In this document: in pieces, positions 9,432-64,000 of the stretch | How positions within the stretch are numbered: position 1 is the stretch's first letter | How the letters are laid out: each line of letters begins with the position of its first letter | NCBI GenBank assembly: GCA_965649765.1 | Contig: OZ287753.1 | Location: 28,024,001-28,088,000, forward strand | Length of the DNA stretch: 64,000 bases | DNA from: Bispira polyomma | Lineage: Eukaryota | Reading direction: 5' to 3' | Translations under genes and position numbers: made by a program | Notes under the pieces: generated by a model | The model's database searches: none | What the model was told of the DNA's origin: nothing | Seen by the model: only the letters and a program-made list of their open reading frames with translations

Positions 9432-9627
9432 CAGTCCCCATGATAAGTATAAGGTAAAGTTAAGGTCAACCAAAGGTTTTCTATGTGTCAGGTAAATGTG
9501 AAGAAAGTAGTAAAACAATTCGATTGAGGGTTTATTTTCTACATGTTAGTACATATTTACATATTATACATAAGGTTAAAAAATTAAATGCTTAAAAACT
9601 TTTAATTTATAAAACATTTGAAGCCCC
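9432..9627 (-). repeat. Element 1 terminal repeat B2
   Basis: 196 bp, near-identical to 10532-10727; contains a sense AATAAA (tttatt at 9531-9536). Confidence 0.95.
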
Positions 9628-9840: not shown

Positions 9841-10299
9841 GTCCTTATAGTTCACCTCAGCCCCCAATTCAGGTGTGCTGTGTATTTTCCTGCATAATTT
9901 TCTGGAGTAATATATATTCTCCTATTATTTATTTATACAGAGGACCGCCATAGACGGCCCTAAATCGACAGGTTTGAATTGTTATTCAGAATATCCTAAT
10001 TTGTAAAATTTTTCCTAGTAGTTAATATGTTAACCTATGCAAGCACTTTTGATATCATTTCAACCTTCCCGACTAGAACTGGTGGCCTAGGACAACACCG
10101 CCTAGCAAGGGTAGGTTCAGCCTCTCAGAGCCTCTATTCCACCCTGGCACCCCAGTGGTTTGCTCAGGGGAAGGTTAAAGTAGACTGAACCCCGCCCCCA
10201 CACGGCCCCCAGCTCGGTCTAAGATGACTCATTCTCTGTACCTAATTCAAAGTTCGATGAAAGTACTTAAGTTAGCTGTGGTAAAGGGAAGATGGTGGG
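9841..10299 (-). ncRNA. Candidate structured RNA in the A2-B2 spacer of element 1
   Basis: Several long stems and sequence blocks shared, with compensatory changes, with 51245-51510 (see findings); no ORF. Confidence 0.55.
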
Positions 10300-10531
10300 T
10301 TGCTTAAAATATTTTCCACTGTTGTCATTTCAGTGGTAAAATTCAATATGGAGGAATATTCCAAAATAGCGGGAATTAGCTAGTGGTGGGGTAATTTGAT
10401 TGGTCTTAACCAGGATGGACAGAAGAATAACTGTGGTGCTATAAGATTAAATGTTTAAGGTAGTTAAATAGATATGTAGCTATGTGTATGTGGACTGAAG
10501 CAGTAGTTCCCTAAAGAGGTCCTGCTTACCA
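10300..10531 (-). repeat. Element 1 internal repeat A2
   Basis: Near-identical to 15844-16080 (few substitutions, one 5-bp indel); directly abuts B1. Confidence 0.95.
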
Positions 10532-10727
10532 CAGTCCCCATGATAAGTATAAGGTCAAGTTAAGGTGAACCAAAGGTTTTCTATGTGTCAGGTAAATGTG
10601 AAGAAGTTAGTAAAACAATTCGATTGAGGGTTTATTTTCTACATGTTAGTACATATTTACATATTATACATAAGGTTAAAAAATTAAATGCTTAAAAAGT
10701 TTTAATTTATAAAAAATTTGAAGCCCC
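10532..10727 (-). repeat. Element 1 internal repeat B1
   Basis: Copy of 9432-9627; begins just after the YR stop. Confidence 0.95.
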
Positions 10728-10735
10728 AAGCCAAA

Positions 10736-11707
10736 CTACAAAGAGGAAGGAATAGCTGCAGCAAATGTAAGGGGTACTACCGAGGCTGCTTGTGGGGTTT
10801 TTTGTAGGTAAGCTCATACTGAAGAGGATCTCCAGAGACCATGGGCCATAATGTTCTGGAGAGAAACATTATGGTTGAAAGCAAAGGTGGCTCCCGACCT
10901 TCTGAAGGTGTGGAAGCCATGAGAGCTATATTGAATTCCTATGTGTTCTAATATGTTTTGCAATGCTGACCTAACATGAGAATCTACTATTGTATTAAAG
11001 GGCGGTTGATTTGCTGCAAATAGAGGGGCAGAGGGGCCCAGGGGCCTAGAATCTAACAAGGCTTTGATAGCAGTGACTGGACAGATACTCCTATTTTTCA
11101 GAATTGGTATCTGTATCACATGAGTATCCGTACGATTTTGTAGGTTCTTAGCCCATTTGAGCAGTATGTGTGCCCCAGGGTACCTAAATATGATATCCTG
11201 TCTTAGAAAATGTCTAGAAGAGTCAAATACAGCCCTAGAATGAGGTGCTATGTTAGATACTCTAAGAAAGGCAAAAAATGCCAGCAAGAATGCTGCCCTG
11301 TATAGTATTGGATCATCTAGGATCTGACATGCCATCTGACATGAGATCTGTTGTAACTGTTCGATTGTGAAAATGCCCTTAGGTTTGGGTTTGAACCCTG
11401 AGTTGTGTGTAAGACTCCTTAATAATAAAGCCACCGAGTTGTGAGTGAATGGGGACAAATCCCAGTTGTATTTGTTTGCAGTGAATCTAATGGCCGCCAT
11501 GTAATTGCTTATGGCTCCAGGTGACAGTTGGTTCTGTATTAAGTACTCCACAAAAGTTATAACTGCATGTACAGTTATGTGATTAATGCCAGCAATTTTT
11601 AGAAAAGCTAAAAATGTTCTGAAATGACCCTTATAAGCTGTGGTAGTCTTTGGTCTGAGTGATGTATTAATCCTTCGCCAAGCAGAGGACATCAGTTGTT
11701 GAGTCAC
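10736..11707 (-). pseudogene. Tyrosine recombinase of element 1 (premature stop before the catalytic Tyr)
   Basis: FLRVSN, KWAK, HTFRRSGA and HGLWRS motifs; TGA at 10814-10816 (likely from TGG) interrupts ...SSV*AYL..., and the frame continues to TAG at 10736-10738. Confidence 0.92.
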
Positions 11708-11725: not shown

Positions 11726-13678
11726 TTAAATTGACAAATTTGGATTGAAATAATCCACCGGTATTGGTTTCCAAACAAAATTCTTCATCAGTGTTTCTAG
11801 TATTATATCACTAGGTGGTTTGCTGGAATATATCCTTGATAGGTGGTCAGCTATTATGTTTTTCTTGCCTGGTATATGTTTTATATTTAACTTAATGTCA
11901 AAAGCTGCTGTAATCAGCCATATGTTTCTCAGGCAAGAAGCCAGAAAAGAATCTTTAGTTTTTTGAGATCCGACAACTAGAACCACAGCCATATTGTTGC
12001 AGTTGATGCTAACTGTCTTATGCTCCCAAGCTCCTGCCCATACGCGTAAAGCGACAATAATAGTTAACATCTCCAGATGTACAATGGTAAGTTCTTTATC
12101 AAAAAGGTTATAAAAGGGGGTGGCATATACTTCGTTGTTGTATATGCCCCCAAATCCTGTTAAGCAGGCATCTAAATGTAGCTCGTCAGCAAATGGAACG
12201 TTCTCATGCTTTATAAAAGTTTTTCCGTTCAATTTTTTCATGAATCGAATAAACCATTGTAGATCACTTTTCATATCTTGAGTGACCTTGAAACACTTTC
12301 TATTGTGATTGTTGCGGAAAGCTGCTAACAATCTATTTATAAAAACACGCACTGGATTTACACATTTGTGGATATATAGCAATTTCCCTAACAAGGATTG
12401 AAAAGTACTCTTGCCTATGTATTTTTTGCTGTTTACGTCAACGCAAGCTTCATAAATTTCCTTCAATTTTTCTGGTTGTATACTAATAGTTCCCTCATCA
12501 AGATCAAAATTGATACCCAAGCAGGTGAGTTTTCTGGTTGGGGGGGTTAACTTGTCTGCGTTCATGGGCAACCCTAGGTCTGTCATCAACGCGTGTAACG
12601 TTTTAAAACCTAATTCTGCCTTGTCTTTGCTTATTACGCCCATGTAGTCATCGATGTATCCGAAAACGTTAAACCCGCGCATGCGCATGTGTGATGTGAT
12701 AGAATCGGTACAACGCTGGAACGCGGCACTGCCATGCACCCACCCGAACGCAATTGCCGGGTCAATGCAGAAACCTTTGTTCCAACTAATTCCTAATTTA
12801 ACTGCGTCCACGGGGTCGACCCTTAAATTACGGAACGCCCGTGAGACGTCAATTTTGAATAACAAACCGTTATCAGTATTGCAAATCCCTTCTGTGATGT
12901 TATCTATAGTCGGAAATTTAAGAGTGAACGCAACGTTGTCGAATTTGTCTCTAGTAACGTCATCGTTTAATGAAGCCCCATACGGGTGCGAAAGATTAAG
13001 TATTACACGTCTTTTGTCTTCGTCTTTGGGTCTCGTGAGCAGGGGAGAGCAGTTATAATCATTTGAATTTATTTCATCAACTGGCCCTAACATGGCACCC
13101 TGTTGCTGTTCCTTTTTTAAGTATTCACCCACCTCATAGGGAAACTGAAGAGCAGTGAAGCGATTTTTTATGTTTTTGTTTGTAATAATATTTTTAAGAG
13201 AAAGGGGAAATCCAAATTTGATGTATTGGATTAACAATTCATCTGGGTAATTTTCCAACATTGTTTCCCAGGCCTTAATATTTAAACCTGAGCTTACAGG
13301 TATTCTGGCCTGTCTATAATTCGGGACTTGAGTTTCTCTAATTGTCTCAGCAATTTTTAAAATTTTTGGAATGGAATCAATCTTTATAGGTAGTTTGTCA
13401 GGTCCTTGGAATTGAAATTTTGTGGGTGATAATGCCAAGAAACCTATATTCTTGTTTTTATCATTAATATCAGTGAGGTCCCTGATCACAGGGTCCCCAT
13501 AGTCTTCCTTAAAGGTAAAGTCCTTAAGTTTGGGAGAAGAAGTCGGACGTACGTATCTTTTATCACAATGTACTTTACCTGTATTTGTTTGGTCTGTCGC
13601 AGCTCTACCTACTTGCTGTTGAGTACTGCTGTCTTCCACATACAGTTTCACTAGTACATTTTGTTTCACAGTTATCAA
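11726..13678 (-). CDS. Reverse transcriptase / RNase H of element 1
   Basis: KIDVSRAFRNL, FGWVHGS and YIDD; RNase H DAC, LEML, CNN (D>N) and ADHLSR. Confidence 0.93.
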   Translation of the reverse strand: MITVKQNVLVKLYVEDSSTQQQVGRAATDQTNTGKVHCDKRYVRPTSSPKLKDFTFKEDYGDPVIRDLTDINDKNKNIGFLALSPTKFQFQGPDKLPIKIDSIPKILKIAETIRETQVPNYRQARIPVSSGLNIKAWETMLENYPDELLIQYIKFGFPLSLKNIITNKNIKNRFTALQFPYEVGEYLKKEQQQGAMLGPVDEINSNDYNCSPLLTRPKDEDKRRVILNLSHPYGASLNDDVTRDKFDNVAFTLKFPTIDNITEGICNTDNGLLFKIDVSRAFRNLRVDPVDAVKLGISWNKGFCIDPAIAFGWVHGSAAFQRCTDSITSHMRMRGFNVFGYIDDYMGVISKDKAELGFKTLHALMTDLGLPMNADKLTPPTRKLTCLGINFDLDEGTISIQPEKLKEIYEACVDVNSKKYIGKSTFQSLLGKLLYIHKCVNPVRVFINRLLAAFRNNHNRKCFKVTQDMKSDLQWFIRFMKKLNGKTFIKHENVPFADELHLDACLTGFGGIYNNEVYATPFYNLFDKELTIVHLEMLTIIVALRVWAGAWEHKTVSINCNNMAVVLVVGSQKTKDSFLASCLRNIWLITAAFDIKLNIKHIPGKKNIIADHLSRIYSSKPPSDIILETLMKNFVWKPIPVDYFNPNLSI

Positions 13679-15843: not shown

Positions 15844-16080
15844 TTGCTTAAAATATTTTCCACTGTTGTCATTTCAGTGGTAAAATTCAATATGGAGGAA
15901 TATTCCAAAATAGCGGGAATTAGCTAGTGGTGGGGTAATTTGATTGGTCTTAACCAGGACAGACAGAAGAATAACTTAAGTGTGGTGCTATAAGATTAAA
16001 TGTTTAAGGTAGTTAAATAGATATGTAGCTATGTGTATGTGGACTGAAGCAGTAGTCCCCTAAAGAAGTCCTGCTTACCA
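15844..16080 (-). repeat. Element 1 5' terminal repeat A1 (putative promoter)
   Basis: Copy of A2; begins TGGT; contains CCAAT and TTCCCGC in the sense orientation. Confidence 0.95.
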
Positions 16081-18328: not shown

Positions 18329-19195
18329 TGGAAAACAGAAGCATTAATCCTATTGTAATTTGTATAGGTATACAGAATTCAAAGCAATATCATGCATCTG
18401 CAATAAACTACATATATCTGCATTAAACTAAAGATGTTACCAAACTCCCCCTTGTGCCCTGTCAGTGCTCTTAAGTTGCACATTGCCACCCTTCCTCCCT
18501 CCTCTGACATTCCCCTTTTTTCCTTCCCTCATCGTTCCTCTTTGAAAATTCTCACTGCTTTTCAGGTTAGGAAAACGTTTTCAACCATTCTCACTGCCCT
18601 TGGGTTTGATCCTTTACACTTTGGCTTTCACTCCTTCAGGCGTTCCGGGGTAGCTTGTGCCTTCCATAACCAAGTTTCCTTACAAAACTTAAAATCACAT
18701 GGTGGTTGGAATTCAGATGCCATTCATTCCTACCTTCACCACACTCCCTTGGCTTCCTCCAAAATTCCTTTAATGTTTCAAAAACTACTACAAAATTAAA
18801 CTACCTTGGGTTGGGATTCTCCCCTTACTCTAAATTTTTAAATTTATTCTTTTAATTTGTGGTTACACCGTGTTGGTGTTTAATTGGTTTTAAATTGTAT
18901 GTTTATTAAATAAATGTTTATTAAATAAATGGTAGTGCCCAACTCTTGCTGTATTATTCAACTGTTCTCCCTCCTATTCATTTCCTGCTGAGTTATATTC
19001 ACCTGCCCTATTTACCTTCTTTAACTTTATCTTATGGTTTCATCTTCATTCCAACCTCACAACTTTAACTATCTGGGGGTGTGTGACTGGAAAACAGAAG
19101 CATTAATCCTATTGTAATTTGTATAGGTATACAGAATTCAAAGCAATATCATGCATCTGCAATAAACAACATATATCTGCATTAAACTAAAGATG
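18329..19195. repeat. 108-bp direct duplication (18329-18436 / 19088-19195) flanking a YR-element fragment
   Basis: 107/108 identical by eye. Confidence 0.9.
18437..19087 (+). mobile_element. 3' fragment of a further Ngaro-type family: YR C-terminus plus B-type repeat
   Basis: ORF 18434-18799 has LCPV, HSFRRSG and HGGWNSDAIHSYL (catalytic H-x-x-R, H/W, Y); followed by TTGGGTTGGG, AATAAA x2 and a GGGGG-TGTG end. Confidence 0.88.
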
Positions 19196-19778
19196 CTAAA
19201 TATATAAAAATGTAGATGAGTAAACAGGCAAACTAACAGATATTTTGCTCTGGAGTTGCTGTATCTTGCTGATAAGAGGTGTCATTGACCAACAGTTCAG
19301 TATTTACTTATACATATAATTATTGAATACATAAATCGTAAGTGGATCACTAAAACAAATCAAGATGTTCAGCCTCTTTCTAAAGAGAAGTACATTTTCT
19401 ACAACAGAAATTGTAAATTTATTCATCTTTCTTCAATATAAACCAGCTGTAATATGATTAAAAAAGTGAGTCACCCATATATTTCAGTTCCAAGAAGTAT
19501 ATGATAAATAAAATATATAAACCATCGTTCACCAAGCCTTCTGTATATGAACAGAAAGAAGACTCTGGTCTACTTCAAGCTATTTGCATTTGTAATTTGC
19601 TTTGTATCTTTTTGCTAGTGCAAATGTCTCATTACTTAACCTGTTTCTTACTTGTCACTTAAGAGTCATCTTCAGACATAAACCCTAGATATAAAAACAA
19701 ACATACATAAATAAATGGGGTGGGGAGAAAAGAACAAAAAACACAAAAAAAGAAACCTAAAAGTTGTCATTTATTTAC

Positions 19779-22268: not shown

Positions 22269-22524
22269 TTTTGAATTGGGATATTTAACTTCCACTCTAG
22301 TACCTGTTTAGGTTATATTGGGATGGGTAGTTGGGAACACTGGAGAAAACATTGCATACAGTTGATCAAGGTTCTGCACTGAAACCAGTGGCCCACAGTA
22401 AGGAACTACCACCTTTCCCACATAGGCCTCGATGGGAGTCGAACCCACGCCACCCGATCACATAGGTGAGAAACCAGTGATTGTGAAGCGCAATGCTTGC
22501 TAACCACTAAGCCACCGCGGCCCA
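22269..22524 (-). mobile_element. Full-length tRNA-derived SINE with 13-bp TSD
   Basis: A box GGTGGCTTAGTGG, B box GGTTCGACTCC; TSD ctcttctgcagta at 22256-22268 and 22525-22537; same family as 47637-47888. Confidence 0.9.
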
Positions 22525-36475: not shown

Positions 36476-38249
36476 CATAAAATAGTTGTACATGATGAGA
36501 TGTCTAAAATAAAAATAAAATTATCAGATGGTAGCTTGTTCCAAAGCTTATTTTGTTACAGCTGACTTAGTTTGTATCATAGGTTGACTTATTTTGTATC
36601 ACCAACTAATGCTCTAATTTCCTTTGCTAGGTTATATTGTTTATTTCAACTTACACCTACTACTGCCTGGTGTAATTTTCTCATTATTCTCATCACTAAA
36701 CAGGCAAAAGTGAGACAGCAAAAAATAGAACAGCAATAAAACAATAGTATCATACACCAAACAACAGCACCATTTGGCCGTTTACAAATGTGTGTGCGAC
36801 AGCTTCATTAGAATCATTATATATTTTTCTACTAAGGTCTTGGTCTATTTATTTGCTTTTTCTGAAAATACAGTTGATGGTATTTTTATGTAGTTTTGTC
36901 AGCATATTGATTGACATTACCTCAGCTGTTGCTAAGTTGATGCTTCTTTTGTGATAGTTTTGTCAATGTGTTGATTGACATTGCCTCAGCAGTTGTTAAG
37001 TTCATGGTTTTTCAAAGTAGCGACAGGTAATACTCGGAGATCAAAGCGTTTAATCCATTGAAGTTAATACTTCACAAAATTAATTTTCAATAATCCTATG
37101 GGGAATGCAATTACCATAAAATCTTCAATTGCTGCTCAGTAGTGTCTTTTGTGTTAGGATAAATGTAACACTGATAAAGAGGTTACGCTTTTACCTGTGT
37201 CCGTTTATTTGTCACCAGGTTATACCCAAATCTATGGCACTGATTTACATGAACTATGGTTTAGGAACAGAGCATGGGCCAATAAAGAAGAATCCCATAA
37301 ATTCTGGACCAGATCTAGGTGGATTTTTGTTTACTTTTTACACTGTTCAGAGCGGTAGAAGTATACATTCTACCGATTGCCCTTCTAGTTTGTATAATAA
37401 ACTGTTATTTGAATGGTTAAAGTAAAGTTATAAGTAAAATTAAGGGGTATTTTAAGTGTTCCAATGATTTTATAACAAAAATTTATGTCTAGTAAATTTA
37501 AAAAGTAGAAACTAATAAAATTTAATTGCAGCTAAAAAATTTATTGTGTACATTTTTATTTATCACCAAATACAAATCTAGACACATTAACTGTGTATAA
37601 CTGAGAAAGGTGTTAAAGCCAAACACATCTTCCATGTGACAAAGTCCCAGGAAAAAAGGTAAACATAAAAACCTATTTCATCTGCATTTCACTTGTTAGC
37701 ACTGACAATGTAAACAGGCAAAAGTGTGACTGATCTAACAGCTAAAACTGCATAAGCAGATTTTTTTTTTGTATGACTACTAAGGCCTTGCTCCACTTTC
37801 ACCACCTTAGCTAGCCATTTCGGAGGGATCTAGGCAATCTAAGCGACCTACAATTCGGACTGGTTGTACACTGTTCATACTAGATTTATAGTAGACTTTA
37901 GTAATTGCCATATGCAAGTTCTCAACTGGCTCCTAACTTGACTACAACTCATTCTTTCTGTGACTATTACCTTATGTCATGAATGTAAAATATGTAAGTG
38001 TTGGTACAATTGCATGTGGGTCAAGTTGAGAATGCATCACATTTTCTGTAGAAATATGGGTAGGTCTAATTAGGTAATCATGGGACAACCAAAACACATT
38101 GCTGACACAACAGCCGTGATCTTTGCTAAACTACTGTGCTATCCTTAAGATGACAATTGGTGGTCAACTTGACCCTGGTGATTCTAATCTTGCATACAGT
38201 TGTTTAAAGGGTTTTTGTAAATGATATTCATCGTAAAAATGTGCTTGGA

Positions 38250-39680
38250 ATTTAGTTTGCTGTTACAGCGCTTTCAAAAGCTTAGGTCATAGTCATATCA
38301 TGACGGCCAGGTTTACTGGTGGAAGAGACCAGTGGTAAAGCATTATAAACCACCGACCCATCCCAAGTACCTGACTTATTGTTTCCAACATGAAGGAACG
38401 AACAGGATTCAAACCCAGGCGCTTCTAACTACTAGGCCACGTGGTATAAGGCTCACCACTGTGTAAAAACTAGACTTCCAGTATTTAGTATAATATTAAT
38501 CCCATTTATCTAATGTAACGGGGTAACTAGACATTTGTGTTCAATACAAGAATAGATAACTATGTTTTTGTCTCAAAATAGAAAGAGCAGAAACAGGTAA
38601 AAATAAGTTCCTACAAAAAATATTTGTAAAATTACAAATACAATTTGTCTGGCAAGATGAAAAAAATAAAAGAAATTTATGGTACATCAGGATCACAAGG
38701 CACCCTTAACCTACCTTAATATATTAATGAGCACATTGTTGTCTGTGGTGTTCTACTTCATCAATACTCTTTTACGTTTTTTTCAAGGACATTCCTAAAC
38801 ATGTACCTTAAAAGGTGTCGAAGAACAATCCACGATAAATGAAAATGAAACCATTTTTGAAAAAGTCACCTATTTCTCAAATATTCTTTGTATTTAGAGG
38901 ATTAATACAATTTTAATTATATATTTTTCATACTTCATTACATGCGTTTTATGTCATGGCTCATATCAGCTAGAAATATTTTGCTATATCTATAATAGGG
39001 TTTAATGACTAATCATAAATATACAGTTGTCAATACCTTTAGCAGCTATAATCACCGATATCTAGTGCAGTATCTTTCTGTAAAATAGCGGTATTACAAT
39101 TGTAACTTGTAACACAGCCCAGATGTGTCAATGGTCAATTGATTAGGTTGTATACAATTAGTATTTTACAGCATCAAATCGAAACCATTTAATAAAAAAT
39201 CCCATTCTCAAGATTAGAAACTTAATATGGCTAGATAGCTCTTTACATATATTCAACGTTGGCTGCAATTATGTTTAAAAATTAATATTTAAAAGACAAT
39301 CTCTTTTCAGTAATGCCTGCCATCATGGAAATCAGTGACATAATTATACTTTTATCCAATAACATATTTATTTTTCACAATAAAATACCTTATCCCCTTT
39401 ATATAGGCCAGTATCTTTGGACAATGAATAGACTAAACACCATAATTGTCAATTACATGCTTCTTATAAGTAATTCTAATTTAGAGAGGGATATCAATTC
39501 ACATAACATACTAGACTACATACATCTCTTACACTCGTGATATCTACTGTCAAAATAGGATATATTGCCAAGAGATAATTTTGTGAAAGTATGTAGTGTT
39601 AGTACAGCGAGGAAGGGGTCTCTTTAGACCCCTCGAAAACTAAAAAAGACAGTGACACCCATTTATAGATTTTGCCTAAT
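38250..39680 (-). repeat. Composite repeat unit, copy D (partial), starting with a SINE at ~38255-38440
   Basis: Direct homologue of 30920-32230; SINE body similar to 55890-56090. Confidence 0.8.
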
Positions 39681-40140
39681 CGACACCTGGCAAGTTACTA
39701 TGTCCTCATGTAGATACAATAACTGAGGCGAAAACAAAGCTAGTGTCTGATCATACCCGAACTGTGTACGTATACTCAATTTATGGTGGAACTATTGTAA
39801 ACAAAAGAGCCCCAGTAAAGATTTTATAGGAACTAAACCTGGTTAAATATAGTGATTGAAGCAAATATTTGTTTTATTTTGAAATTAACCTTAGTCATGG
39901 ACCTTGTACAAAAGCAGCAGCTGGGAAGTATAGTTGGTCTATTGTTTATGTTAAACTAAAATGTTCACACAGACTGTAACAGTGAAGTGAGTTTAACACT
40001 TTAATTACATTTCTTAACTTACAATTATTACTAAAGCTCCACGGTGTTTCTAAAGATCTAATTAGATTCCTTCATCGTAATTGATTGCAGTGTAGTAAAA
40101 AAAAAGTTATAGAAACAATGCTATTTAATTTATATATATA

Positions 40141-45601: not shown

Positions 45602-45764
45602 TGGTGGGCTGACGCCTATGCGACAGCCCCCTTAGTTCTAGTGGCAGATCACTGGGGGGCCAATTAGGCCACCTGGGGTCACGGGGGCAAGTATAAAGGG
45701 TTTGCCGCCAACATGTGCCATCATTATTTTAAAAGCATTTGATAGATAAGGAGTGTTTTAAAAC
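45602..45764 (+). repeat. Element 2 repeat A1 (putative promoter)
   Basis: Copy at 51080-51244; 5' hairpin gggctg/cagccc, CCAAT and GTATAAA. Confidence 0.93.
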
Positions 45765-45817
45765 TAGGGCTTTACTACCCGTAATTTTGTTTTCAACCTC
45801 ATTTTATATCTATGTAA

Positions 45818-46802
45818 ATGCCTAACAAAGAATACCCTTGTGGTGTGTGCTCTGGTTGACATGAACGTCCGGTTGGCAAAAAGTGTAAATATAACTTGGT
45901 GGACAGCGTCGCCGATGAAATGGCTGCCGTCAGTCCTGCTACTCCAGAGGTTTCGGATTCTGTTTCTGGTTTGATTCTACAACAAAGCGATGAACGAAAA
46001 GATGAATAGCATGGACCGGCGAGTGCAGGCTACAGAGGCGGCGCTGTGTACATCCAGTGACAAGACATGTAACACTTCTTTTAAATCAGTTCCTAGTGTA
46101 CCTAATACTAGTGAACCAGTAGTTGAGGCTGTTGTGCCATCCCTAGAGTATTTACGTTCTAATGCAGGGTTACAAAAGCAGGTTGATCAACGTCTGCTGC
46201 AGTTGCAGCACTTAAATGACTTAACGGGAGGTGAATTTAAGTCCCAGAGAGGTGGTGTTGAGGCCCCCATAAAGCGAAACGTGGAATGGCCACAAAATAT
46301 GACTTGTCTGGTGCAAAAAAGATTTGACCCATCTATGATGACCTTACGTTGGTTTAATTCATCTCTGGCTTTATCCAGTGCAGCCAACAGCAAAAGGTCC
46401 GAGAGGCCATGTTAGAATACCTTGCCAATTTAATGGACGACGCCCATGATTTTTCATGGGATGCTGCCAAAGCCTCTCATGCCATTTTATTAACTAATAT
46501 GGAAATGGATCATCTCAGTTGGACAGACGTTGACAAGGTTGACCAGATAAGGCATGCTCATGCACACCATCATATTACCTCGGCATCGGGTGGGTCTGGC
46601 CCTTCTAAAACCAGTGGTAATGGTAAAAACAAAGTACAAGCTAAAACTCCTGGAGTTAACTGTCGTTTCTTTCAAGATGAAATGTGTAAATTTAAGGCCA
46701 GCGATCAAACCTCTAGACAGTGGTTCAAACACTGCAGTGAGAGTTGAGAGGGTACTCACCAGAACAAAGCTATGTCCTAAGAAAGTGGTGACAAAAAACT
46801 GA
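45818..46802 (+). pseudogene. gag-like ORF1 of element 2 (stops and frameshifts)
   Basis: MPNKEYPCGVCSG*HERPVGKKC; VVPSLEYL; VEWPQN; DAHDFSWDAAKA; CRFFQ; ends VVTKN*. Confidence 0.88.
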
Positions 46803-46828
46803 GGGGCCACTGTGACAGTGCAGTGGTT
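46793..46828 (+). promoter_or_regulatory. Putative -1 ribosomal frameshift signal (A_AAA_AAC, 5-nt spacer, hairpin)
   Basis: Heptamer in correct phase immediately before the gag stop; stem ggccactg/cagtggtt; the -1 frame is homologous to that of element 3. Confidence 0.7.
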
Positions 46829-49464
46829 AACAAGAAATTTGTACATAGAATATACTCTAGAGTTGGATGTAAATCTACCTTTTCAGATTTTAAACTGTTT
46901 AACCATGTAGTTTTAATTCTAATGTATATGTGAAGCAAATTGTCCCAAGGCCTTATCGGGACATGCTGAAACAGGGCACAAGTGGTGTCGTTGGAAATTT
47001 CAGCAGAAAACCTAAGGTTAGTGAAATTGGAGAAATACTTGAAGCCATGGCCCCTATTGCTACAGTCATGTCACGAAAAGGTGGTAAACATGTTTCTAAC
47101 AATCCATTGTTCCCTACAAAACGTGGGGACAAAAACAAAATCAATCCTGTTGCCAACAAACCATTGTCTAGGTTGAATGTTTGAACTGTTAAGAAACGTG
47201 TTGAAAACAACTCAGTAAACGTGTCAAAACAGAACCATGGTTCCTCTGTCAAGCCAATTAAGTTGAGTGTTATCAACTCTAACAATGGACAGGGGTTTCC
47301 CCCATTGTCAAACCAATTAAGTCGGGTTAAACAGAACAATGAACCTGATAGTTTCAGGTTGGCCCTTTATAATAGGTTTGCTTGATTGAACAGTGCGTGT
47401 GTAGAAACAATGGAATTAGGTGACACTTCACTTGAGGGGGGAAGTCCTTACTGTGGTCTGACTTTGACACAACATAAAAAACCGACTACAAAATTAACCC
47501 ATTGTGATGACAAGTATGCTTTAGACCTCCTTAGAGGCCCTGACAAAAGACAGCGCTTAAATGAAGCTAAGGACTGTGTGACATACAAATTGTGGGACGT
47601 GCAAAATAGTGGCAAATATGGGTTCATTCCTACTAGTGGGGCCGCGGTGGCCTAGTGGTTAGCAAGCATTGCTCTTCACAACTACTGGTCTCTCACCTCT
47701 GGGCGGCGTGAGTTCGAATCCCGTCGATGCCTCTGTGGGAAAGGTGGTAGTTCCTTACTGTGGGCCGCTGGTTTCTCTGCAGAACCTTGACCGACTGTAT
47801 GCAGTGTTTCCTCCAGCGTTTCCAACTACCCGTCCCAATATAACCTACTAAAAGGTACTAGAGTGGACGTTAAATATCCAAATTCAAATTCATTCCAACG
47901 AGCTTTTACTTTACACAAGCACCTTAGGTTGGATGGATGTCACAACTATAGGGGCCTACAAATACCTGTTAACACACAACCCAATGCTCAAGTGTGGGCC
48001 AAGTATTTGAAGAATTATTGGGATTGGGAACTCCCCTTACTAATAAAATTCGGGTTTCCCCTAGACTGTAATGGTAAACATGAGTTTAAGTCTGAGATTA
48101 GTAATCATTCTTCTGCCTATCAATATCCCAACCACGTGGCTCATTACTTGGAGGAAGAATGTTCATTGGGTGCCATGTATGGGCCGTTTGCAGTTCCCCC
48201 TATTGAAAACATTCACACTTCCTCATTCATGACTAGAGACAAATCAAGCTCGATCAACCGAAGAGTCATTATAGATTTAAGTTGGCCAGCAGGCCATTCG
48301 GTTAATGCATCGGTGTCTTCCAATTCATATTTATACAAGGAATACTTACTTACCCTTCCATTGACATCATCACCAGCCAAGTTTTGGCCATGGGTAGGGG
48401 TTCCTTGATATTTAAAGCTGACATTAGTCGAGCCTTTTGACACGTGACTATTGATCCGAAAGACATAAATTTGTTGGGTCTATACTGGGATAGCTACTAT
48501 ATCGATGGCTCGTTACCCTTCAGTTATCGGCACGGATCAGTTATTTTTCAAAGAATTTCAGGCAAAATAAGGTACATAATGGAAGGTGAAGGTCACCAAA
48601 TCACCAACTACATCGATGATCTGTTATGTTGCTCTATTACGTCTAAAATATACAAAAGCAGAGCTAGGCCTGACCCTTAACCAGAGGAAGCTGGTTCCCT
48701 CAGCAACTAGGGTGTCATGCCTTGGTATAGTCATAGACTTGGTTCAATTCAACACTTCTATATCAGAAGAAAACTTAATCAATATCAAAAACAAGTGTAA
48801 CAAATGCAGTAATAAAAAATCTTGCACAGGGTTCCTTGTTATATGTGTCTAAATGGTCAAATGTGTCAAGAATGTTGTAACTTCTGAGAAGCAATCATAA
48901 AAGTAAAAGTATGAAAATTACCCCTGAGTTCCAAAAGGATCTGAACTGGTTTACTGCTTTCCTTTATAAATATAACCGGGTGGCTTTTTTCCATCATGCC
49001 CCCATCACTGCCATGATTGAGTTAGATGCCTGCCTCACAGGTATGGGGGGAATTCATGGAAAACAAGTCTACTACCTCCCTGTTCCTGTTGCTATGCAAC
49101 ACCACAATATTGCCTCGTTGGAAATGTTAAACATTCATGTCGCTCTCAAGTTGTGTGGAAGACATTGGCATGGTCACAAAATACTAGTAAAATGCAACAA
49201 CCAGGCTGTTGCAAGTGTCCTCACTCATGGTAGAACTCGAGACAGTTAATTAGCCTTGTACTCCCGAAATATATTTATTTCAGCCAGCCAGTTTGATTTA
49301 GAGCTAAAAATAGTGTATTTATAGGAAATGACAACACAACTGCTGACCTGCTGTTTTGTTGGATAAATTCTACTAAAGATAACGTTCTCTTGCAGGAGCT
49401 GGCTGGCACTGTCCAATGGTGTACACTGACTGAAGATCACTTGTTGCTTAATGACCATATATAA
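46799..49464 (+). pseudogene. pol (RT/RNase H) of element 2, heavily disrupted and SINE-interrupted
   Basis: RVIIDLSWP, DISRAF*H, YIDD, LDACLTG and LEMLNI fragments in different frames. Confidence 0.9.
47637..47888 (+). mobile_element. tRNA-derived SINE inserted in element 2 pol
   Basis: A box GGTGGCCTAGTGG, B box GTTCGAATCC; imperfect 14-bp TSD ttcattcctactag (47623-47636) / ttcattccaacgag (47889-47902). Confidence 0.9.
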
Positions 49465-49507
49465 TGTATTACTGTGTCCTCTTTCTCTTGGCAGTACTTT
49501 GTGTTAG

Positions 49508-50473
49508 AGGAAAGAGTCCTCTGCAACAGTTACTCTAAAAAATGCAACTAAGAAGCTGCACCTGGCCTTCTGCAGATCAACCGACAAATCATATGCAGCC
49601 ATGTATAGGGTGTACTTAGCTTATGCCACATTCTCGGATCAGCCCGTTGATCAGGTGACAGTTATTGATCTTTTTGCATTTGTAGAATTGTTGCAGTATA
49701 ACTATTTATCTGCCATTTAAGGCTAAGTGTATTGTGTATAATGTACCAATTTGTGCCTTCAGTGACCCTCGTGTGGCCTATTATCAAAAAGCTGTGCAAT
49801 TAGCTGCCCCCCTCCATGTAAAACTTAAAAGATTATAGATATACCACTTTTGACCAGTATTGTGAGTACTTCCCTCACTACTTACATGGGCTTAATTTTT
49901 AAAGCACTTTATCTTGTCAGCTACTTCTCTTTTCTTAGGCTATCAAATTTAGTACCTCACTCCAGTGTTCAGTTCTCCCCTTTAAAACATCTAGCTAGGG
50001 AAGATGTTATGATTCACAGGAACAAAGCTGTCCTCCTTGTAAAATGGTCTAAAACAATGCAAAGAAACAACCAAATTAAGTTGATTACAATTCCACGACT
50101 GCTGGGTTCCCCCCTTTGCCCGGTGATGTCACTGGAGGACATCTTGGCTATTACCCCTTCTGAACCAAACGTCCCTTTATTTCAGTTTAAAGATAATACA
50201 AAATGGGTTCCCCTTACCAACACTCGGGTTCGTTTGCATTTCAAAAATGTACTTGCCAGGTTCCAACTAAAAGATTCTGGTCTCACCCTACACGCCTTCC
50301 GACGTTCGGGTGCCACGTTTGCTTTTAACCACAATGTTAGTATTGAAAATATCCAAAAACATTGCACTTGGATGTCGGACTGCGTGTGGAACTATGTCAC
50401 CGACTGGGTGGATGCTGGGCATCAGGTGGCTCATACATTCAGGCAACATCTCTCTACTACCTCCCCTTCTTAG
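49508..50473 (+). pseudogene. Tyrosine recombinase of element 2 (N-terminal half disrupted)
   Basis: FLRLSNL, KWSKT, LCPV, HAFRRSGA and HCTWMSDCVWNY. Confidence 0.92.
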
Positions 50474-50491
50474 ACTCCTACCTGGTGGGCT

Positions 50492-51078
50492 TGGGTGTTT
50501 GTAGTCAATTAGTCAACCTTAGTTTATATGTAACTTAAGTCATTAAGTAATATCCTTTGATTCAATGTACTGAGATGGTAGTAATGTACAGTGTTGTCTG
50601 CACATTACAACTAGTTCTTTAACTTAGTAGTATTTGCATGTTACAACAATTACTTTAACTTATCTTCTTAACTTACTCTTAACTTAAAATAGTTAACTTT
50701 GCAATAGAGGTTAGTAACACTATTTAAGTGCAACTCCTAAAATTTAACTCTCTCAGTTCAAAAAACTACGGTCACCTTATTTTTGTAATTAGCCTACGGG
50801 CTGTGTAAATTTCTATTAACAGTAACCTATATCAGGTGACCTTACCCTTTATTAGAATCATGGTACGTAAAATATTTATTATTATTTAAGTGACCTTAAG
50901 TCACCGAATTGGTAATTGGTTCAACTTTAGTTAAGGTCACCTTAACTCTTTCGTATTAAAACTTTTTTTTATATTTTAACACTTATACTAACAATAAAAT
51001 AAATATCTTACTGCATTCTGTTGTTATACTTATCTTGCCTTCTTGACCTCTGACCTCTGGCCTGTCACGCGGGGAAAT
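50492..51078 (+). repeat. Element 2 repeat B1
   Basis: Near-copy of 51720-52303; AATAAA near the 3' end. Confidence 0.93.
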
Positions 51079-51079
51079 G

Positions 51080-51244
51080 TGGTGGGCTGACGCCTATGTG
51101 ACAGCCCCCTCAGTTCTGGTGGCAGGTCACTGGGGGGGCCAATTAGGCCACCTGGGGTCACGGGGGCAAGTATAAAAGCATTTGTCGCCAACAGTCGCCA
51201 TCATTATTTTAAAAGCATTTGATAGATAAGGAGTGTTTTACAAC
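51080..51244 (+). repeat. Element 2 repeat A2
   Basis: Copy of A1; retains the TATA box (gtataaaa ~51169-51176). Confidence 0.93.
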
Positions 51245-51510
51245 CCACCATGTACCCTCCCATTTACCAGCTTGTTGTAGTTTCAGAATGCAGTTCACCA
51301 TGGCTTCCACAGTTAACAGTGACAACAGTACCCTTATGGTATAGCTAGCTGCTTGTACTCTGGTGGTCTAGATCCTCGATATTCATGTTAGGTAGGGTGC
51401 TATTTTGCTTAGCCATGCAAGGGACCCAGGATTTAGCTAGAAGGATCTCTGTAAATAACCTAGTCAACATGGTTTATCACTAGATAAGGCTTAAGGTGAA
51501 GCACATGGAC
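51245..51510 (+). ncRNA. Candidate structured RNA in the A2-B2 spacer of element 2
   Basis: Stems ttcacc/ggtgaa, catggct/agccatg and agtaccct/agggtgct plus a crossing helix; blocks shared with the element 1 spacer. Confidence 0.55.
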
Positions 51511-51719
51511 TGTCCGGATTTTAAACGAAGCAGACATTTACGTTAATCAGTTTTAATTCTTTTAACTTTACACTTATACGTACTAATAATTATCTATTGT
51601 AACTATTTTACTTGTAACTGTTTTATATTGCTTACCTGCACGTGAGCGCTTTTCTGTTATCCTATGAAGTATTTTAATTACAGTATTTTTATGCGGTTGA
51701 TCCACTAGCTGTTTTGTAG

Positions 51720-52303
51720 TGGGTGTTTGTAGTCAACTAGCCAACCTTAGTTTATATGTAATTTAAGTCATTAAGTATTATCCTTTGATTCAATGTACTG
51801 AGATGGTAATAATGTACAGTGTACAACTCGTACTTTAACTTAGTAGTATTTGCATGTTGCAACGATTACTTTAACTTATCTTCTTAACTTACTCTTAACT
51901 TAAGTAGTAGAGGCTAGTAACACTATTTAAGTGCAAATCCTAAAATTTAACTCTCTCAGTTTAAAAAACTAAGGTCACCTTAATTTGGTAATAAGCCTAC
52001 GGGCTGTGTAAATTTATATTAACAGTAAGCTATATAAGGTGACCTTACCCTTTATTAGAATCTTGGTACATAAAATATTTATTATTATTTAAGTGACCTT
52101 AAGTCTCCAAATTGGTAATTGGTTCAACTTTAGTTAAGGTCACCTTAACTCTTTCGTATTAAACTTAGTATAACCTTAAGTCATCTTGCATATAGTAGTT
52201 TTAACACTTAGACTAACAATAAAATAAATATTTTACCGTATTCTGTTGTTATACTTATCTTGCCTTCTTGACCTCTGACCTCTGGCCTGTCACGCGGGGA
52301 AAT
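51720..52303 (+). repeat. Element 2 terminal repeat B2
   Basis: Near-copy of B1; ends cgcggggaaat. Confidence 0.93.
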
Positions 52304-58583: not shown

Positions 58584-59926
58584 AGGACAAGAGCCCCTAG
58601 TGGCCCTGGTTTAAACTTTTTAAACACATAAGGCATTTTAAACAACAAATAATGGCATTAATCAACCTTTTTATTTATAAACCAATGTACCTGCATTTGT
58701 AAAGCTACCAGTGACATAGCCCTGTAATATAAACAATATCTCATATTGAGTAGGCTCAATATGTCAAACTTTTTTTGAAAAAGTACTGCCATATTTTAAC
58801 AACAACAAAATGAAATATCGATGAATGGTAATTTCTGATGTATGTCACGACCCTATTAGTAGATTTATAACCTCAATAAATACACCAAATGGCATCATGA
58901 TGTATAGACACGAACCTGTCAGTTTATGCTCTCATAGTTGTTACTGAATGTGACAGTTGGCAAAAATAAAGTGATAATTGATAGACTGATCCACCTTGAT
59001 AAATAATATTAAATAAGTGCAACCAATAAGTACATCTTTGGCATCAAATGAAACCGAAAAGGGAAGTAAAACTGCGTAATAATTGCTTAAAACATTGTTG
59101 AAAATCATAATTTTATTTAATCTATGAAATCCGAGTTTTGTCTCTACTTAATCATTACAACCTAACTGTAGATAATTATGCAATTTATATAGTGAAATTA
59201 TTTTCAAAGTTTTACAAATTTATTTAAATTTATTATAATAACTTATTAATTAAACTTTGCAGTTTTGTGGTCTAATGTAAATAAAATAATATATAAGAAT
59301 TATAGTAGCTTAGTATCCAATCTATTACTTTTTAGGTGCTTCAAATATCCCTCAATCAGCCAGCCAAATGATCATATCCTGCTCTTTGGCTTTGTCACCA
59401 GCTGTCCTGACTTATTCAGAATCAATATTACAAAAAGGCTGTGTGTTCTTTAATTTCTCCTCACTCCTTGGATGTCAATGAAAATTACATAAATATGTAT
59501 TTTATGTATTAGATTTTTTAAAAATCCATCATGACTTAGTGATAATAAAAAAAGTATCATCTTATCTAAAAAAAGAAAAGGTGAACAAAACTGTAAATTA
59601 TGACCCATTAGGCAGTATGGCAGTGTCATTTACCTTTTACAGCTAGAGCTGATAGCTACCATTTTCTGGGTACATTTTTTCCCCTCATGATTTTGAAAGC
59701 TAACGCCTCCAGCGTTAGTGGCCTCAGTTCTGGGGTACCAGGCTGTCCACTACTATGGGATGGATGGGCGAGTATATAAGCCATCCCCCTTTCAAATTCT
59801 CCCGCCTTTTATCGTTTGTCAGCAGAAGCACTAGGAAAATTTAAATACTGTTTGGGTGACAAAGAGTGTTTTATGTCTATACTGTTTATTTGGTTTTAGT
59901 ATTTTAGTTCAATATACACTCAAGTC

Positions 59927-60960
59927 ATGCCAGGTAAAAAGACTGTGTTTTGTCCGAAGTGTTTGCAAAAACATGAGAGACCTGTTGGAAGAAACTGTTC
60001 AGTTAATATGCCTGATATCTCGGGTGAGGGGGTGGAAGTTGATGCTGGCTCCCATGAGGACTCGCTGGTTCATCCGAACGAGGCTGTATCTAGCGCTATA
60101 CTACAGCAGTTGCAATCTCTCAGCCAGGTAGTGGAGAGGATGGATCAGCGAGTCCAGCAGACGGAGGCAGCGTTGGCAGCTAACCTCACCAGTAGTAAGG
60201 CAAGTAGTACCGTTACTTCTAGTATCACTCCTAGTGTTTCTAAAGATTTAGTCTCTGCTGACGAAGGTAAAAGCCCACCTACTGGCCCGGATATTGTCGT
60301 TCCGAGTGTCGAATTTTTAAGTCAGAACGCTCAGATTCAGTTGCAAGTAGAACAGAGGTTAAAAGAACTCCGGTCTCTTAATGAAATTCCCTCAGGTAAA
60401 ATTAAGTCTCAGAGAACTGGGGGGAACGAGGTTAATGTAAAAAAGGCGGTCGAATGGCCCCAGAATTATGTGCTGACTGGCAAGACTCGCCCTAGTTATG
60501 ACGACTTAACCCTCGTACAATGGGTTTGTGGCGTCACCCGGATCGCTCACGAGGAGAAGTCGATTGAAATTAAGAACGCTATGCTAGATTACATGAGTGG
60601 CCTCATGGAGGACGCCCAAGATTTTTCGTGGGAGGCAGCGAAGGCCTGCCACATGGTAGTCCTGACAAATATGGAGATGGACAAGTTCGGGTGGTTGGAT
60701 GTCGAGAAGGTCGACCGGATCTGCAGGGCACACGCCCAACGCCATGTAGGTGTGTCCAGATCTTCTCATGGGGCGAATGGCCGTGCTGGTAGCACTGGCA
60801 GTAGTAAAACTAGTCAGAAAAAGTCAACACCTTGCAGGTTCTTTCAAGAAGGAACTTGCAAGTTCTCTAACTCACATAATACAGGTGGGCAAATGTACAG
60901 GCATGGTTGTGAAACTTGAGGAAGACCAGTATGTGTAGCAAAAAGGAGGCAAAATACTGA
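59927..60960 (+). CDS. gag-like ORF1 of element 3 (open to 60919; probable original end ...CSKKEAKY* at 60960 after a small deletion)
   Basis: N-terminal C-x2-C-x3-H-x7-C; coiled-coil-like segment; EWPQN, SYDDL, DAQDFSW and CRFFQEGTC. Confidence 0.9.
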
Positions 60961-60984
60961 GGGGCCACTGCTTGGATGCGGTGG
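60951..60984 (+). promoter_or_regulatory. Putative -1 frameshift signal with mutated heptamer (A_AAA_TAC) plus hairpin
   Basis: Same position and context as in element 2 (ACTGAGGGGCCACTG identical); stem ccactgc/gcggtgg. Confidence 0.6.
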
Positions 60985-61536
60985 ACAGAAAGGTTAAAAA
61001 ATTTAAGGTTGTAAATAGAACTGTTTATGGCACAGGCTTTAAAGATTTTCATTTGTTTGAGGAAAATGTGTATCAGAAAATGTGTAAATATATGAAGGTC
61101 AAAAGGCCGAATGTTAGCTATAGTGAGGCTTTACTGCTAGTACCAGAAAATCAATGTTTGTATATAATACAGGGCATACAGGAAATCTGAGGTATAAGGG
61201 TGAAGTTCACAGGTTTAGCTCTGGGGAGGTGAAACAAAAGGGCAGGTTTTGCCAACCACAAAAGTTTGGCAGAGCTGAACTCAATAATAATGTTGACACC
61301 TCTGCTGCCACATCTATTCAAATGTTTAAAAAGTTAACACCGGTAATTGGTACCTCCATTCAAGTGGCTAAGAAGGTGACACCTATTGTGAAGCGACCCC
61401 CATGCACAAAGCACCAGAGCGTGGAGACAAAAGGTGTTAGAATATCGATTCAGAGGGGGGCGAAAAGAGCCGCGTCAATAAAGCTCACTGTGGCCTTCAG
61501 CTTAACAATCGGTTTTCCGCGTTAACACAAATACCT
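60957..61536 (+). pseudogene. N-terminal extension of pol, element 3 (two frameshifts)
   Basis: LRGHC...FKDFHLF and NRFSAL match element 2 LRGHC...FSDFKLF and NRFA*L. Confidence 0.65.
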
Positions 61537-63477: not shown

Positions 63478-63501
63478 CAGGTTGTAGTTTTCTTTTTTCA
63501 G

Positions 63502-64000
63502 GCACTCACCCTGTGGGTCTGGCTCTGATGAGACGGGCTTGTGATAGGCTGAACTCAGCTCTCACTCCAGCCACTAATAAAGCATATGACAGGATGTTCC
63601 GACAGTTCCTAGCTTTTGGAGTCTTTATGTCTTGGCCTCCCCACAAGGTGACTGTGTTGCAAATTTTAGCATATCTAGAGTTCATAAATTTCAATGGTGT
63701 TTCGGCCTCTCAGGTAGTAAATCACATGTCGGCTGTGAAGGCAAAATGTGTCATGTTTCATATAGATGTGCAAGTATTTTCTGATCAGAGAATTTCTTAT
63801 TTCACTAAGGCCATGGCTATGCATAGACCTTTACAGGTGAAGTTGAAGTCAATTTTTGATGTGCACTTGCTTAGGGCTCTGATTAGTAAATGTGATAGTA
63901 CTTACATGGGGCAGATTTTCAAGGCTGTTTATTTGACAAATTTTTTCACATTTTTGCATTTATCCAATCTGTGTCCTCATTCAATGGGGTCATACTCTCC
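63502..64000 (+). CDS. Tyrosine recombinase of element 3, N-terminal part (not in the ORF track because it runs off the window)
   Basis: Open frame ...LMRRACDRLNSALTPATNKAYDRMFRQFLAF...FKAVYLTNFFTFLHLSNLCPHS; the first catalytic Arg reads His (CAT 63957-63959); first ATG at 63528. Confidence 0.9.

What the first reader, a model, noticed from the sequence alone, without database searches (positions are those of the whole stretch)
9841..10299. Conserved, covarying structured RNA in the A2-B2 spacer of two divergent Ngaro-type families
SEEN: elements 1 and 2 have unalignable terminal repeats, yet their ORF-free A2-B2 spacers share ordered blocks and helices (sense strand, element 1 vs element 2). 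Start: AACCCACCAT...CC.TTTACCA..GCT in both. Closing helix: UUUACC or UUCACC pairing with GGUGAA. Helix 2: UAACUUA/UAGGUUA (10268-10274 / 10031-10037) vs CAUGGCU/AGCCAUG (51299-51305 / 51411-51417). Helix 3: AGUACUUU/AAAGUGCU (10260-10267 / 10042-10049) vs AGUACCCU/AGGGUGCU (51327-51334 / 51394-51401), a UU:AA to CC:GG compensatory swap. An internal GAUAUY can pair with the downstream block AGGAUAUUCUG-AAUAAC (9981-9997) vs AGGAUCUCUGUAAAUAAC (51442-51459), which would be a pseudoknot. 3' block: GGCU-GAGGUGAACUAUAAGGAC (9841-9862) vs GGCUUAAGGUGAAGCACAUGGAC (51488-51510). KNOWN: split-direct-repeat YR elements lack a tRNA primer site, and to my knowledge their priming is unresolved. INFERENCE: an element-encoded functional RNA (RT-binding/priming scaffold, packaging signal or ribozyme). 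I do not recognise it as a known family.
Basis: partly seen in the sequence, partly recalled or inferred. Interest (0 to 1): 0.9.

Follow-up and report, generated by a model that had tools for sequence, protein, structure and literature searches.

The report
Ngaro spacer: candidate priming/packaging RNA

Summary
Both elements are Ngaro-type retrotransposons and the quoted strings are present. The claimed shared fold is not supported: outside the 5' block the two spacers align no better than shuffles, helices of that length occur at chance frequency, and helices 2/3, the closing helix and the pseudoknot break in closer relatives.

Modules are optional: one spacer is 68 nt.

Best reading (inferred, about 0.5): the spacer is the equivalent of a retroviral primer-site-plus-packaging leader behind an internal 'LTR' (B1+A2). 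No primer was identified and no expression data could be obtained. The scan noted structured spacer RNA and the B|A junction hairpin before on other DNA of this genome; my look-ups showed no note on the edge-block argument.

The parts
15844..16080 (-). Element 1 repeat A1; not followed by a C-rich block
11726..13678 (-). Element 1 RT/RNase H ORF (YIDD motif)
   Evidence: (RVT_1 E 1.4e-8)
10814..11707 (-). Element 1 tyrosine recombinase ORF; open frame shorter at the C-terminus than in sister copies (303 vs 327 aa)
10723..10735 (-). G-rich motif at the left edge of B1 (consensus TTGG(G/C)TT|TGG), conserved before B1 but not before B2; PPT-like or fold-back primer candidate
10532..10727 (-). Element 1 repeat B1, with AATAAA at 10631-10636
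10492..10537 (-). Hairpin across the B1|A2 circle junction; lower arm covaries between families; candidate folded attachment site of the recombinase
   Evidence: helix 1 only
10300..10531 (-). Element 1 repeat A2, promoter-like, CCAAT about 104 nt before the spacer
10276..10299 (-). C-rich block at the A2 edge; candidate primer-binding site
10070..10220 (-). Module X: three-way junction with long variable P2 arm and near-invariant junction core (CCGUGUGG ... UGCUAGG); sense-strand fold
9942..9960 (-). Hairpin Y, kept with substitutions in L003-L013
9628..10299 (-). Element 1 A2-B2 spacer (672 nt, about 135 nt shorter than sister copies)
9432..9627 (-). Element 1 repeat B2, with AATAAA at 9531-9536
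45602..45764 (+). Element 2 repeat A1
49850..50473 (+). Element 2 tyrosine recombinase ORF piece, 35% identical to element 1's; the RT region upstream is broken into several frames
50484..50497 (+). G-rich motif at the left edge of element 2 B1
50492..51079 (+). Element 2 repeat B1, AATAAA at about 50993
51074..51116 (+). Element 2 B1|A2 junction hairpin
51080..51244 (+). Element 2 repeat A2 with TATAAA at 51171-51176
51244..51270 (+). Element 2 C-rich block at the A2 edge
51371..51447 (+). Element 2 clade module: GAUCCU/AGGAUC helix (invariant in 4 copies) enclosing a hairpin with a 7-nt UAUUGCU-type loop (51398-51413) shared with L084-L086
51245..51719 (+). Element 2 A2-B2 spacer (475 nt)
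51720..52303 (+). Element 2 repeat B2

Best explanation
The spacer is a cis-acting replication region of the read-through genomic RNA, the Ngaro counterpart of a retroviral primer-site-plus-packaging leader. SHOWN: B1+A2 form one internal LTR-like unit (poly(A) signal in B, promoter motifs in A, a covarying hairpin at the B|A joint), bounded on the left by a conserved G-rich motif and on the right by a conserved C-rich block; A1/A2 identity stops at that block; folded modules follow, differing by clade. INFERRED: messages that end at the B1 poly(A) site cannot rebuild the element, and the spacer is the only unique stretch of the read-through RNA, so signals placed there select the replication-competent RNA. 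First-strand cDNA starts at the C-block, which is why repeat A ends there, as an LTR ends at its primer site. RT copies A2 and B1 and this A-B copy transfers to a B repeat at an RNA 3' end. The primer is unknown; the most economical candidate is the element's own G-rich motif before B1, folded back on the block with 4-7 bp and cut Tf1-style (weak support). Module X and the other folds are accessory Gag/RT-binding or packaging structures, not a universal catalytic core.
For: CCC[A/T]CC at the A2 edge in 18/18 spacer lineages tested (background 0.36 per kb) and again in L091, fetched afterwards, whose spacer is only 68 nt. It spans clades with 34-35% YR identity. A1/A2 identity ends 0-1 nt into the block in 11/11 outside families and in elements 1 and 2; the block does not follow A1 in any of them. 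The 23-nt clade-1 version has 439 genomic matches against 20 controls. G-rich motif before B1 only; register-constrained pairing with the block scores 217 for own family, 202 permuted (p 0.03), 149 for the B2 control. Module X: 93.5% of cells paired, 10 pairs with changes on both sides, 0/500 shuffles reach the covariation score; sense fold is 6-19 kcal/mol better than antisense in 11/11; core motif 188 matches against 5 controls. ORF-only and spacer-only insertions with exact A and B ends exist, as a shared A-B intermediate predicts. No primer is known for DIRS-order elements (PMC7192593).
Against: No primer identified; the block has no consistent long partner inside the element. The pairing permutation p of 0.03 is inflated by relatedness, and the unconstrained version of that test gave p 0.73. 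A plus-strand stop signal would put a conserved motif at the same edge. The solo forms are equally explained by ordinary A-by-A and B-by-B recombination. Covariation counts on 11 related sequences are not a probability. Outside families come mostly from one assembly (ERZ22147071).
Confidence: 0.5

Rival explanations
1. The C-block is a plus-strand stop (or template-switch) signal, not a primer site. First strand starts at the RNA 3' end in B2; plus strand starts at the G-rich motif before B1, copies B1-A2 and halts at the block, giving a B-A bridge that sets both sharp edges.
For: Explains both the A right edge and the B left edge with one intermediate; the G-rich motif sits where a polypurine tract would; a 3'-end hairpin primer was proposed for DIRS-1 (cited in PMC7192593).
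Against: No known stop mechanism without a primer at that site; the motif before B1 is U/G-rich rather than a purine run.
Confidence: 0.2
2. A2-spacer-B2 is a separate Pol II unit making a 0.3-1.8 kb non-coding RNA that acts in trans (RT or Gag scaffold, primer donor, decoy), in the spirit of retron or telomerase RNA.
For: A2 carries CCAAT at -95 to -110 or TATAAA at -71 to -74 and B carries AATAAA in 17/17 families, so the unit is complete; sense-strand folds; solo A-spacer-B copies.
Against: Those signals are forced copies of A1 and B1; modules are optional and a 68-nt spacer is found in a complete element; no expression data.
Confidence: 0.14
3. Module X is a self-cleaving ribozyme of an undescribed class that processes the genomic RNA.
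For: Near-invariant junction nucleotides with freely varying arms is the pattern seen in small ribozymes; retrotransposons often carry ribozymes (own knowledge).
Against: No match to any Rfam ribozyme even at E up to 10; absent from element 2, from the young L014 family and from all outside loci.
Confidence: 0.08
4. The conserved pieces are DNA-level or incidental: the C-block is a KLF/Sp-type or splice-acceptor-like sequence and the folds are neutral inverted repeats.
For: Pyrimidine run followed by YAG in several families; folding z-scores along the spacers are mostly unremarkable.
Against: The block does not follow A1, the main promoter copy; no consistent donor; conserved G-U pairs and sense-strand bias in X.
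Confidence: 0.08

Closest known systems
Ngaro-type tyrosine-recombinase retrotransposons (A1-ORFs-B1-A2-B2)
   Same: Repeat order, RT/RNase H then YR, no methyltransferase hit (PMC8547959, PMC9210276).
   Different: The papers I could read describe no spacer signals, edge motifs or RNA folds. Goodwin and Poulter 2004 was not available, so earlier mention there cannot be excluded.
PBS plus packaging leader of LTR retrotransposons and retroviruses
   Same: Conserved short signal abutting the repeat edge, followed by lineage-specific structured non-coding RNA; a second conserved signal at the other edge of the repeat unit.
   Different: The block starts CCC, not TGG, so it is not a tRNA 3'-end site; it lies near the 3' end behind an internal repeat instead of in the 5' leader.
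Tf1/Tj1 self-priming LTR retrotransposons
   Same: Primer site next to the repeat without tRNA complementarity; fold-back and cleavage would supply the primer (PMC4600332).
   Different: In Tf1/Tj1 the partner is the 5' end of the message; here no such partner was found and the candidate partner gives only 4-7 bp.
DIRS-1 internal complementary region (ICR)
   Same: Internal non-coding signal needed to rebuild ends; in clade 1 part of the block is complementary to the B|A junction over 9-10 nt.
   Different: No compensatory change between block and junction in L011-L014; ICR acts after first-strand synthesis (PMC7192593).
SIRE of trypanosome VIPER
   Same: A2-spacer-B2 unit found on its own (PMC6681497), like the solo A-spacer-B copies here.
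   Different: SIRE's internal part is about 30 bp and no fold is described in that paper.

Membership tests
Ngaro retrotransposon | Split direct repeats A1-ORFs-B1-A2-B2 | tested here: met
Ngaro retrotransposon | RT/RNase H followed by tyrosine recombinase | tested here: met
Ngaro retrotransposon | No methyltransferase domain (separates it from PAT/DIRS) | tested here: met
   no Pfam methyltransferase hit in any ORF; absence of a hit only
Ngaro retrotransposon | Groups with named Ngaro elements in an RT or YR tree | not testable with these tools
   no named reference sequences on hand; the tree has unnamed rows only
tRNA primer-binding site | TGG next to the repeat edge, complementary to a tRNA 3' end | tested here: not met
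   block starts CCC in 17/18; tRNA-fragment priming not tested
Tf1-type self-priming | Primer site abuts the repeat edge | tested here: met
   (position only)
Tf1-type self-priming | Site complementary to the 5' end of the element's own message | tested here: not met
   best-duplex scan finds no common partner; alternative partner before B1 inconclusive
Tf1-type self-priming | RT/RNase H cleavage releases the primer | not testable with these tools
   needs biochemistry
Known small ribozymes (hammerhead, HDV-like, twister, twister-sister, pistol, hatchet, hairpin) | Match to the family covariance model | tested here: not met
Known small ribozymes | Self-cleavage | not testable with these tools
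   needs an in vitro assay
ICR-like or recombinase guide RNA | Complementarity to the recombination junction that covaries between families | tested here: inconclusive
   9-10 nt complement in part of clade 1, not compensated in L011-L014; permutation p 0.013 on related families
   no ORF signal; 76 of 188 X cores have the C-block 85-115 nt upstream, control 0; modules follow the YR tree; remaining X copies could not be read

The most novel reading that the evidence does not exclude
Ngaro elements self-prime in a way not described for any retroelement: the G-rich motif before B1 folds back on the C-block, the RNA is cut at the B1 edge (by RT/RNase H, or helped by the three-way-junction RNA acting as a new catalytic or RT-binding module), and one A-B strong-stop cDNA then jumps to any of three RNAs, giving full, ORF-only and spacer-only insertions, with the spacer unit also made as its own non-coding RNA.
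Probability: 0.15. Interest if true: 0.9.

Novelty: new variant of a known kind. Interest (0 to 1): 0.63.

Why it matters
How tyrosine-recombinase retrotransposons start reverse transcription is unresolved (PMC7192593). A motif that sits within one base of the A-repeat edge in every complete family examined gives a single-nucleotide prediction for where a cDNA strand starts or stops, which one end-mapping experiment can test. The spacer also holds at least one well-supported RNA fold with no Rfam family, present in hundreds of copies in this genome.

Tried and rejected
Guide-RNA pairing of the block with the B|A junction: no compensation. Pairing of the block with the B2 left edge: no signal. 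Splice-acceptor reading: YAG after the block is common but there is no consistent donor after A1; left open, low weight. Homology between module X and the repeated module in L061/L082/L083: looked similar by eye, no profile hit either way. Group II intron domain V or telomerase CR4/5 likeness of X: recalled resemblance only, no Rfam support. Viral contigs gave no relatives. In one search my second helix was mis-registered; only helix 1 counts.

Full report
CONTEXT. The window lies in a 1.04-Gb animal genome with about 14 large contigs (the host was not identified). It holds element 1 (minus strand, 16080-9432), element 2 (plus strand, 45602-52303) and the start of a third element cut by the window end. 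Both have the order A1-ORFs-B1-A2-spacer-B2 with RT/RNase H and tyrosine recombinase (YR) and no methyltransferase hit, which is the Ngaro layout (PMC8547959, PMC9210276). Their YRs are 35% identical and fall in two separate, well-supported clades. I compared 60 loci from this genome, complete elements from a second assembly, ENA ERZ22147071, and JGI contigs.

CHECK OF THE OBSERVATION. The inference of a shared fold fails four tests. First, with the 5' block removed the two spacers align at chance level (210 of 500 shuffles as good; with the block 5 of 500), and profiles of each clade do not detect the other. Second, helices of 7 bp or more are as common as in shuffles (75 vs 79 in element 1; 30 vs 30 in element 2). 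Third, relatives much closer than element 2 break them: helix 3 keeps 0-4 of 8 pairs in L005, L007, L011 and L013, and the pseudoknot loses a pair even in the 97%-identical sister copies. Fourth, the ensemble probability of those helices is 0.05 or less. Rfam gives nothing and there is no ORF trace.

WHAT IS UNIVERSAL. CCC[A/T]CC lies at the A2 edge in 18 of 18 spacer lineages, against 0.36 per kb in the window. It was then found, as predicted, in a distant family fetched later (L091, 34% YR identity to both elements), whose whole spacer is 68 nt. A1/A2 identity ends 0-1 nt into the block in all 11 outside families with both copies and in elements 1 and 2, and the block does not follow A1 in any of them. 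A 23-nt clade-1 version has 439 matches in the genome against 20 for the reversed control. The other edge of the B1-A2 unit has its own motif, TTGG(G/C)TT then TGG, before B1 and not before B2. B holds AATAAA in 17 of 17 families; A holds CCAAT at -95 to -110 or TATAAA at -71 to -74 from the block in 16 of 17. The B|A joint sits at the top of a 5-7-bp arm that pairs with a box 31-34 nt into A, with compensatory changes (helix 1: 92% paired, two pairs changed on both sides). I found this hairpin before looking up earlier notes, which report it on other DNA. So B1+A2 behaves like one internal LTR with a conserved signal at each edge and the recombination site in the middle.

WHAT IS LINEAGE-SPECIFIC. 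Eleven copies at 59-99% identity fold the same way: 93.5% of cells paired, 10 pairs with changes on both sides, no shuffle of 500 reaching the covariation score, and slid registers at 37-56% (related sequences, so not a probability). Several G-U pairs are invariant and the sense strand folds better in 11 of 11, which points to RNA rather than first-strand cDNA. A covariance model finds at least 150 copies above 100 bits; by eye at least 35 lie 0.5-0.9 kb behind a YR listed (both lists are capped). The two junction words alone match 188 places against 5 controls, with arms that differ freely between families, and 76 of these have the C-block 85-115 nt upstream. X is absent from element 2, from the young L014 family (sister to L022, which has it) and from all outside loci. 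Element 2's clade has another module: an invariant GAUCCU/AGGAUC helix (probability 0.86) and a 5-bp hairpin with a UAUUGCU-type loop that recurs, with an A-U to G-C swap, in L084-L086, its sister group in the YR tree. That support is modest: seven sequences, weak E-values, and the hairpin is not favoured in the window copy's own ensemble. L061, L082 and L083 carry yet other repeated modules, including a covarying hairpin with a CUGAC loop.

INSERTION CLASSES. In one young family, 20 copies are complete and 17 copies, 97-100% identical, end exactly at B1; roughly 40% of the 60 loci do the same. Copies that start exactly at A and hold only spacer and B also exist, like SIRE of VIPER (PMC6681497). 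These fit a shared A-B intermediate, but also plain recombination between repeats, so they do not decide the mechanism.

MECHANISM. Shown: the anatomy above. Inferred: only the read-through RNA contains the B|A joint needed to rebuild both ends, and the spacer is its only unique part, so priming and packaging signals placed there would select it over messages ending in B1. A repeat that ends at a fixed conserved motif is what a primer site produces in LTR elements (established knowledge). I therefore read the C-block as the first-strand start and the folds as accessory Gag/RT-binding structures (0.5). The primer is not a tRNA 3' end, since the block starts CCC. The best internal candidate is the motif before B1 folding back with 4-7 bp, as in Tf1-type self-priming (PMC4600332), which would also explain the sharp left edge of B. 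Support is weak: 217 for own-family pairing vs 202 permuted (p 0.03, related families) and 149 for the B2 control, and no signal in the unconstrained test. The main rival is that the block stops plus-strand synthesis (0.2). A separate trans-acting RNA (0.14), a new ribozyme (0.08) and incidental conservation (0.08) follow.

NOVELTY AND LIMITS. The element class is known. The edge block, module X and the clade-2 hairpin match no Rfam family and are not in the papers I could read; the founding Ngaro paper was unavailable. No primer is known for DIRS-1 (PMC7192593). Earlier notes of this scan describe a structured spacer RNA and the junction hairpin elsewhere in this genome; they are AI notes, not independent support. 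Outside families come almost all from one assembly, so universality beyond these hosts is untested.

VERDICT. Observation partly confirmed; the specific shared fold is not supported; the spacer is very likely functional RNA territory with one universal edge signal and optional folds. Interest 0.63, new variant of a known kind.

Noticed in passing
window 10492-10537 (-) and 51074-51116 (+); L061, L078, L080, L082-L088: Covarying hairpin across the B|A circle junction, with the cut point at the top of the lower arm; resembles a folded single-strand recombination site (integron attC or CTXphi attP type, from memory).
   Followed up: partly
G000, family of L047: 17 near-identical copies end exactly at B1 against 20 complete ones; a high share of ORF-only copies for so young a family.
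   Followed up: partly
G000 C5:548194, C5:78914130, C7:14262081, C4:81424032, C11:41431828: Solo A-spacer(-B) insertions; tandem B-A-spacer duplication at C1:106.44 Mb and two X copies 1079 bp apart at C4:81.135 Mb, which would regain an internal B|A joint.
   Followed up: partly
window 59700-64000 (+): Third Ngaro-type element with an intact-looking RT ORF (61537-63477), cut by the window end; its spacer could not be fetched.
   Followed up: no
window 18329-19198: 3' fragment of a further divergent YR element between 111-bp direct repeats.
   Followed up: no
window 10242-10250 (-): The nonamer UACAGAGAA (METTL16 site of U6 and MAT2A; weak Rfam MAT2A_D hit, E 0.5) occurs in element 1's spacer; not kept in L003 or more distant relatives, probably chance.
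   Followed up: partly
L061:8424-8803, L082:8485-9016, L083:8565-8814: Spacers of the second host carry repeated modules: a hairpin with CUGAC loop and swapped stem pairs, and a GACCCC-hairpin-GGGAG module; not shown to be related to X.
   Followed up: partly
L078:8360-8385: The G-rich motif that normally precedes B1 is degenerate in this family, while a near-exact copy of it sits inside the spacer.
   Followed up: no
B repeats of most loci, e.g. window 51050-51065 and 10545-10570: Clusters of TGACCT (nuclear-receptor half-site-like) words near the 3' end of B, upstream of A2 but not of A1.
   Followed up: no
window 22270-22523 and 47639-47888: A 250-bp repeat is inserted in element 2's coding region and has an inverted copy 25 kb away.
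   Followed up: no
window 27400-39700: Large cluster of direct and inverted repeats with a 78-nt tandem array at 34912-35301; not examined.
   Followed up: no
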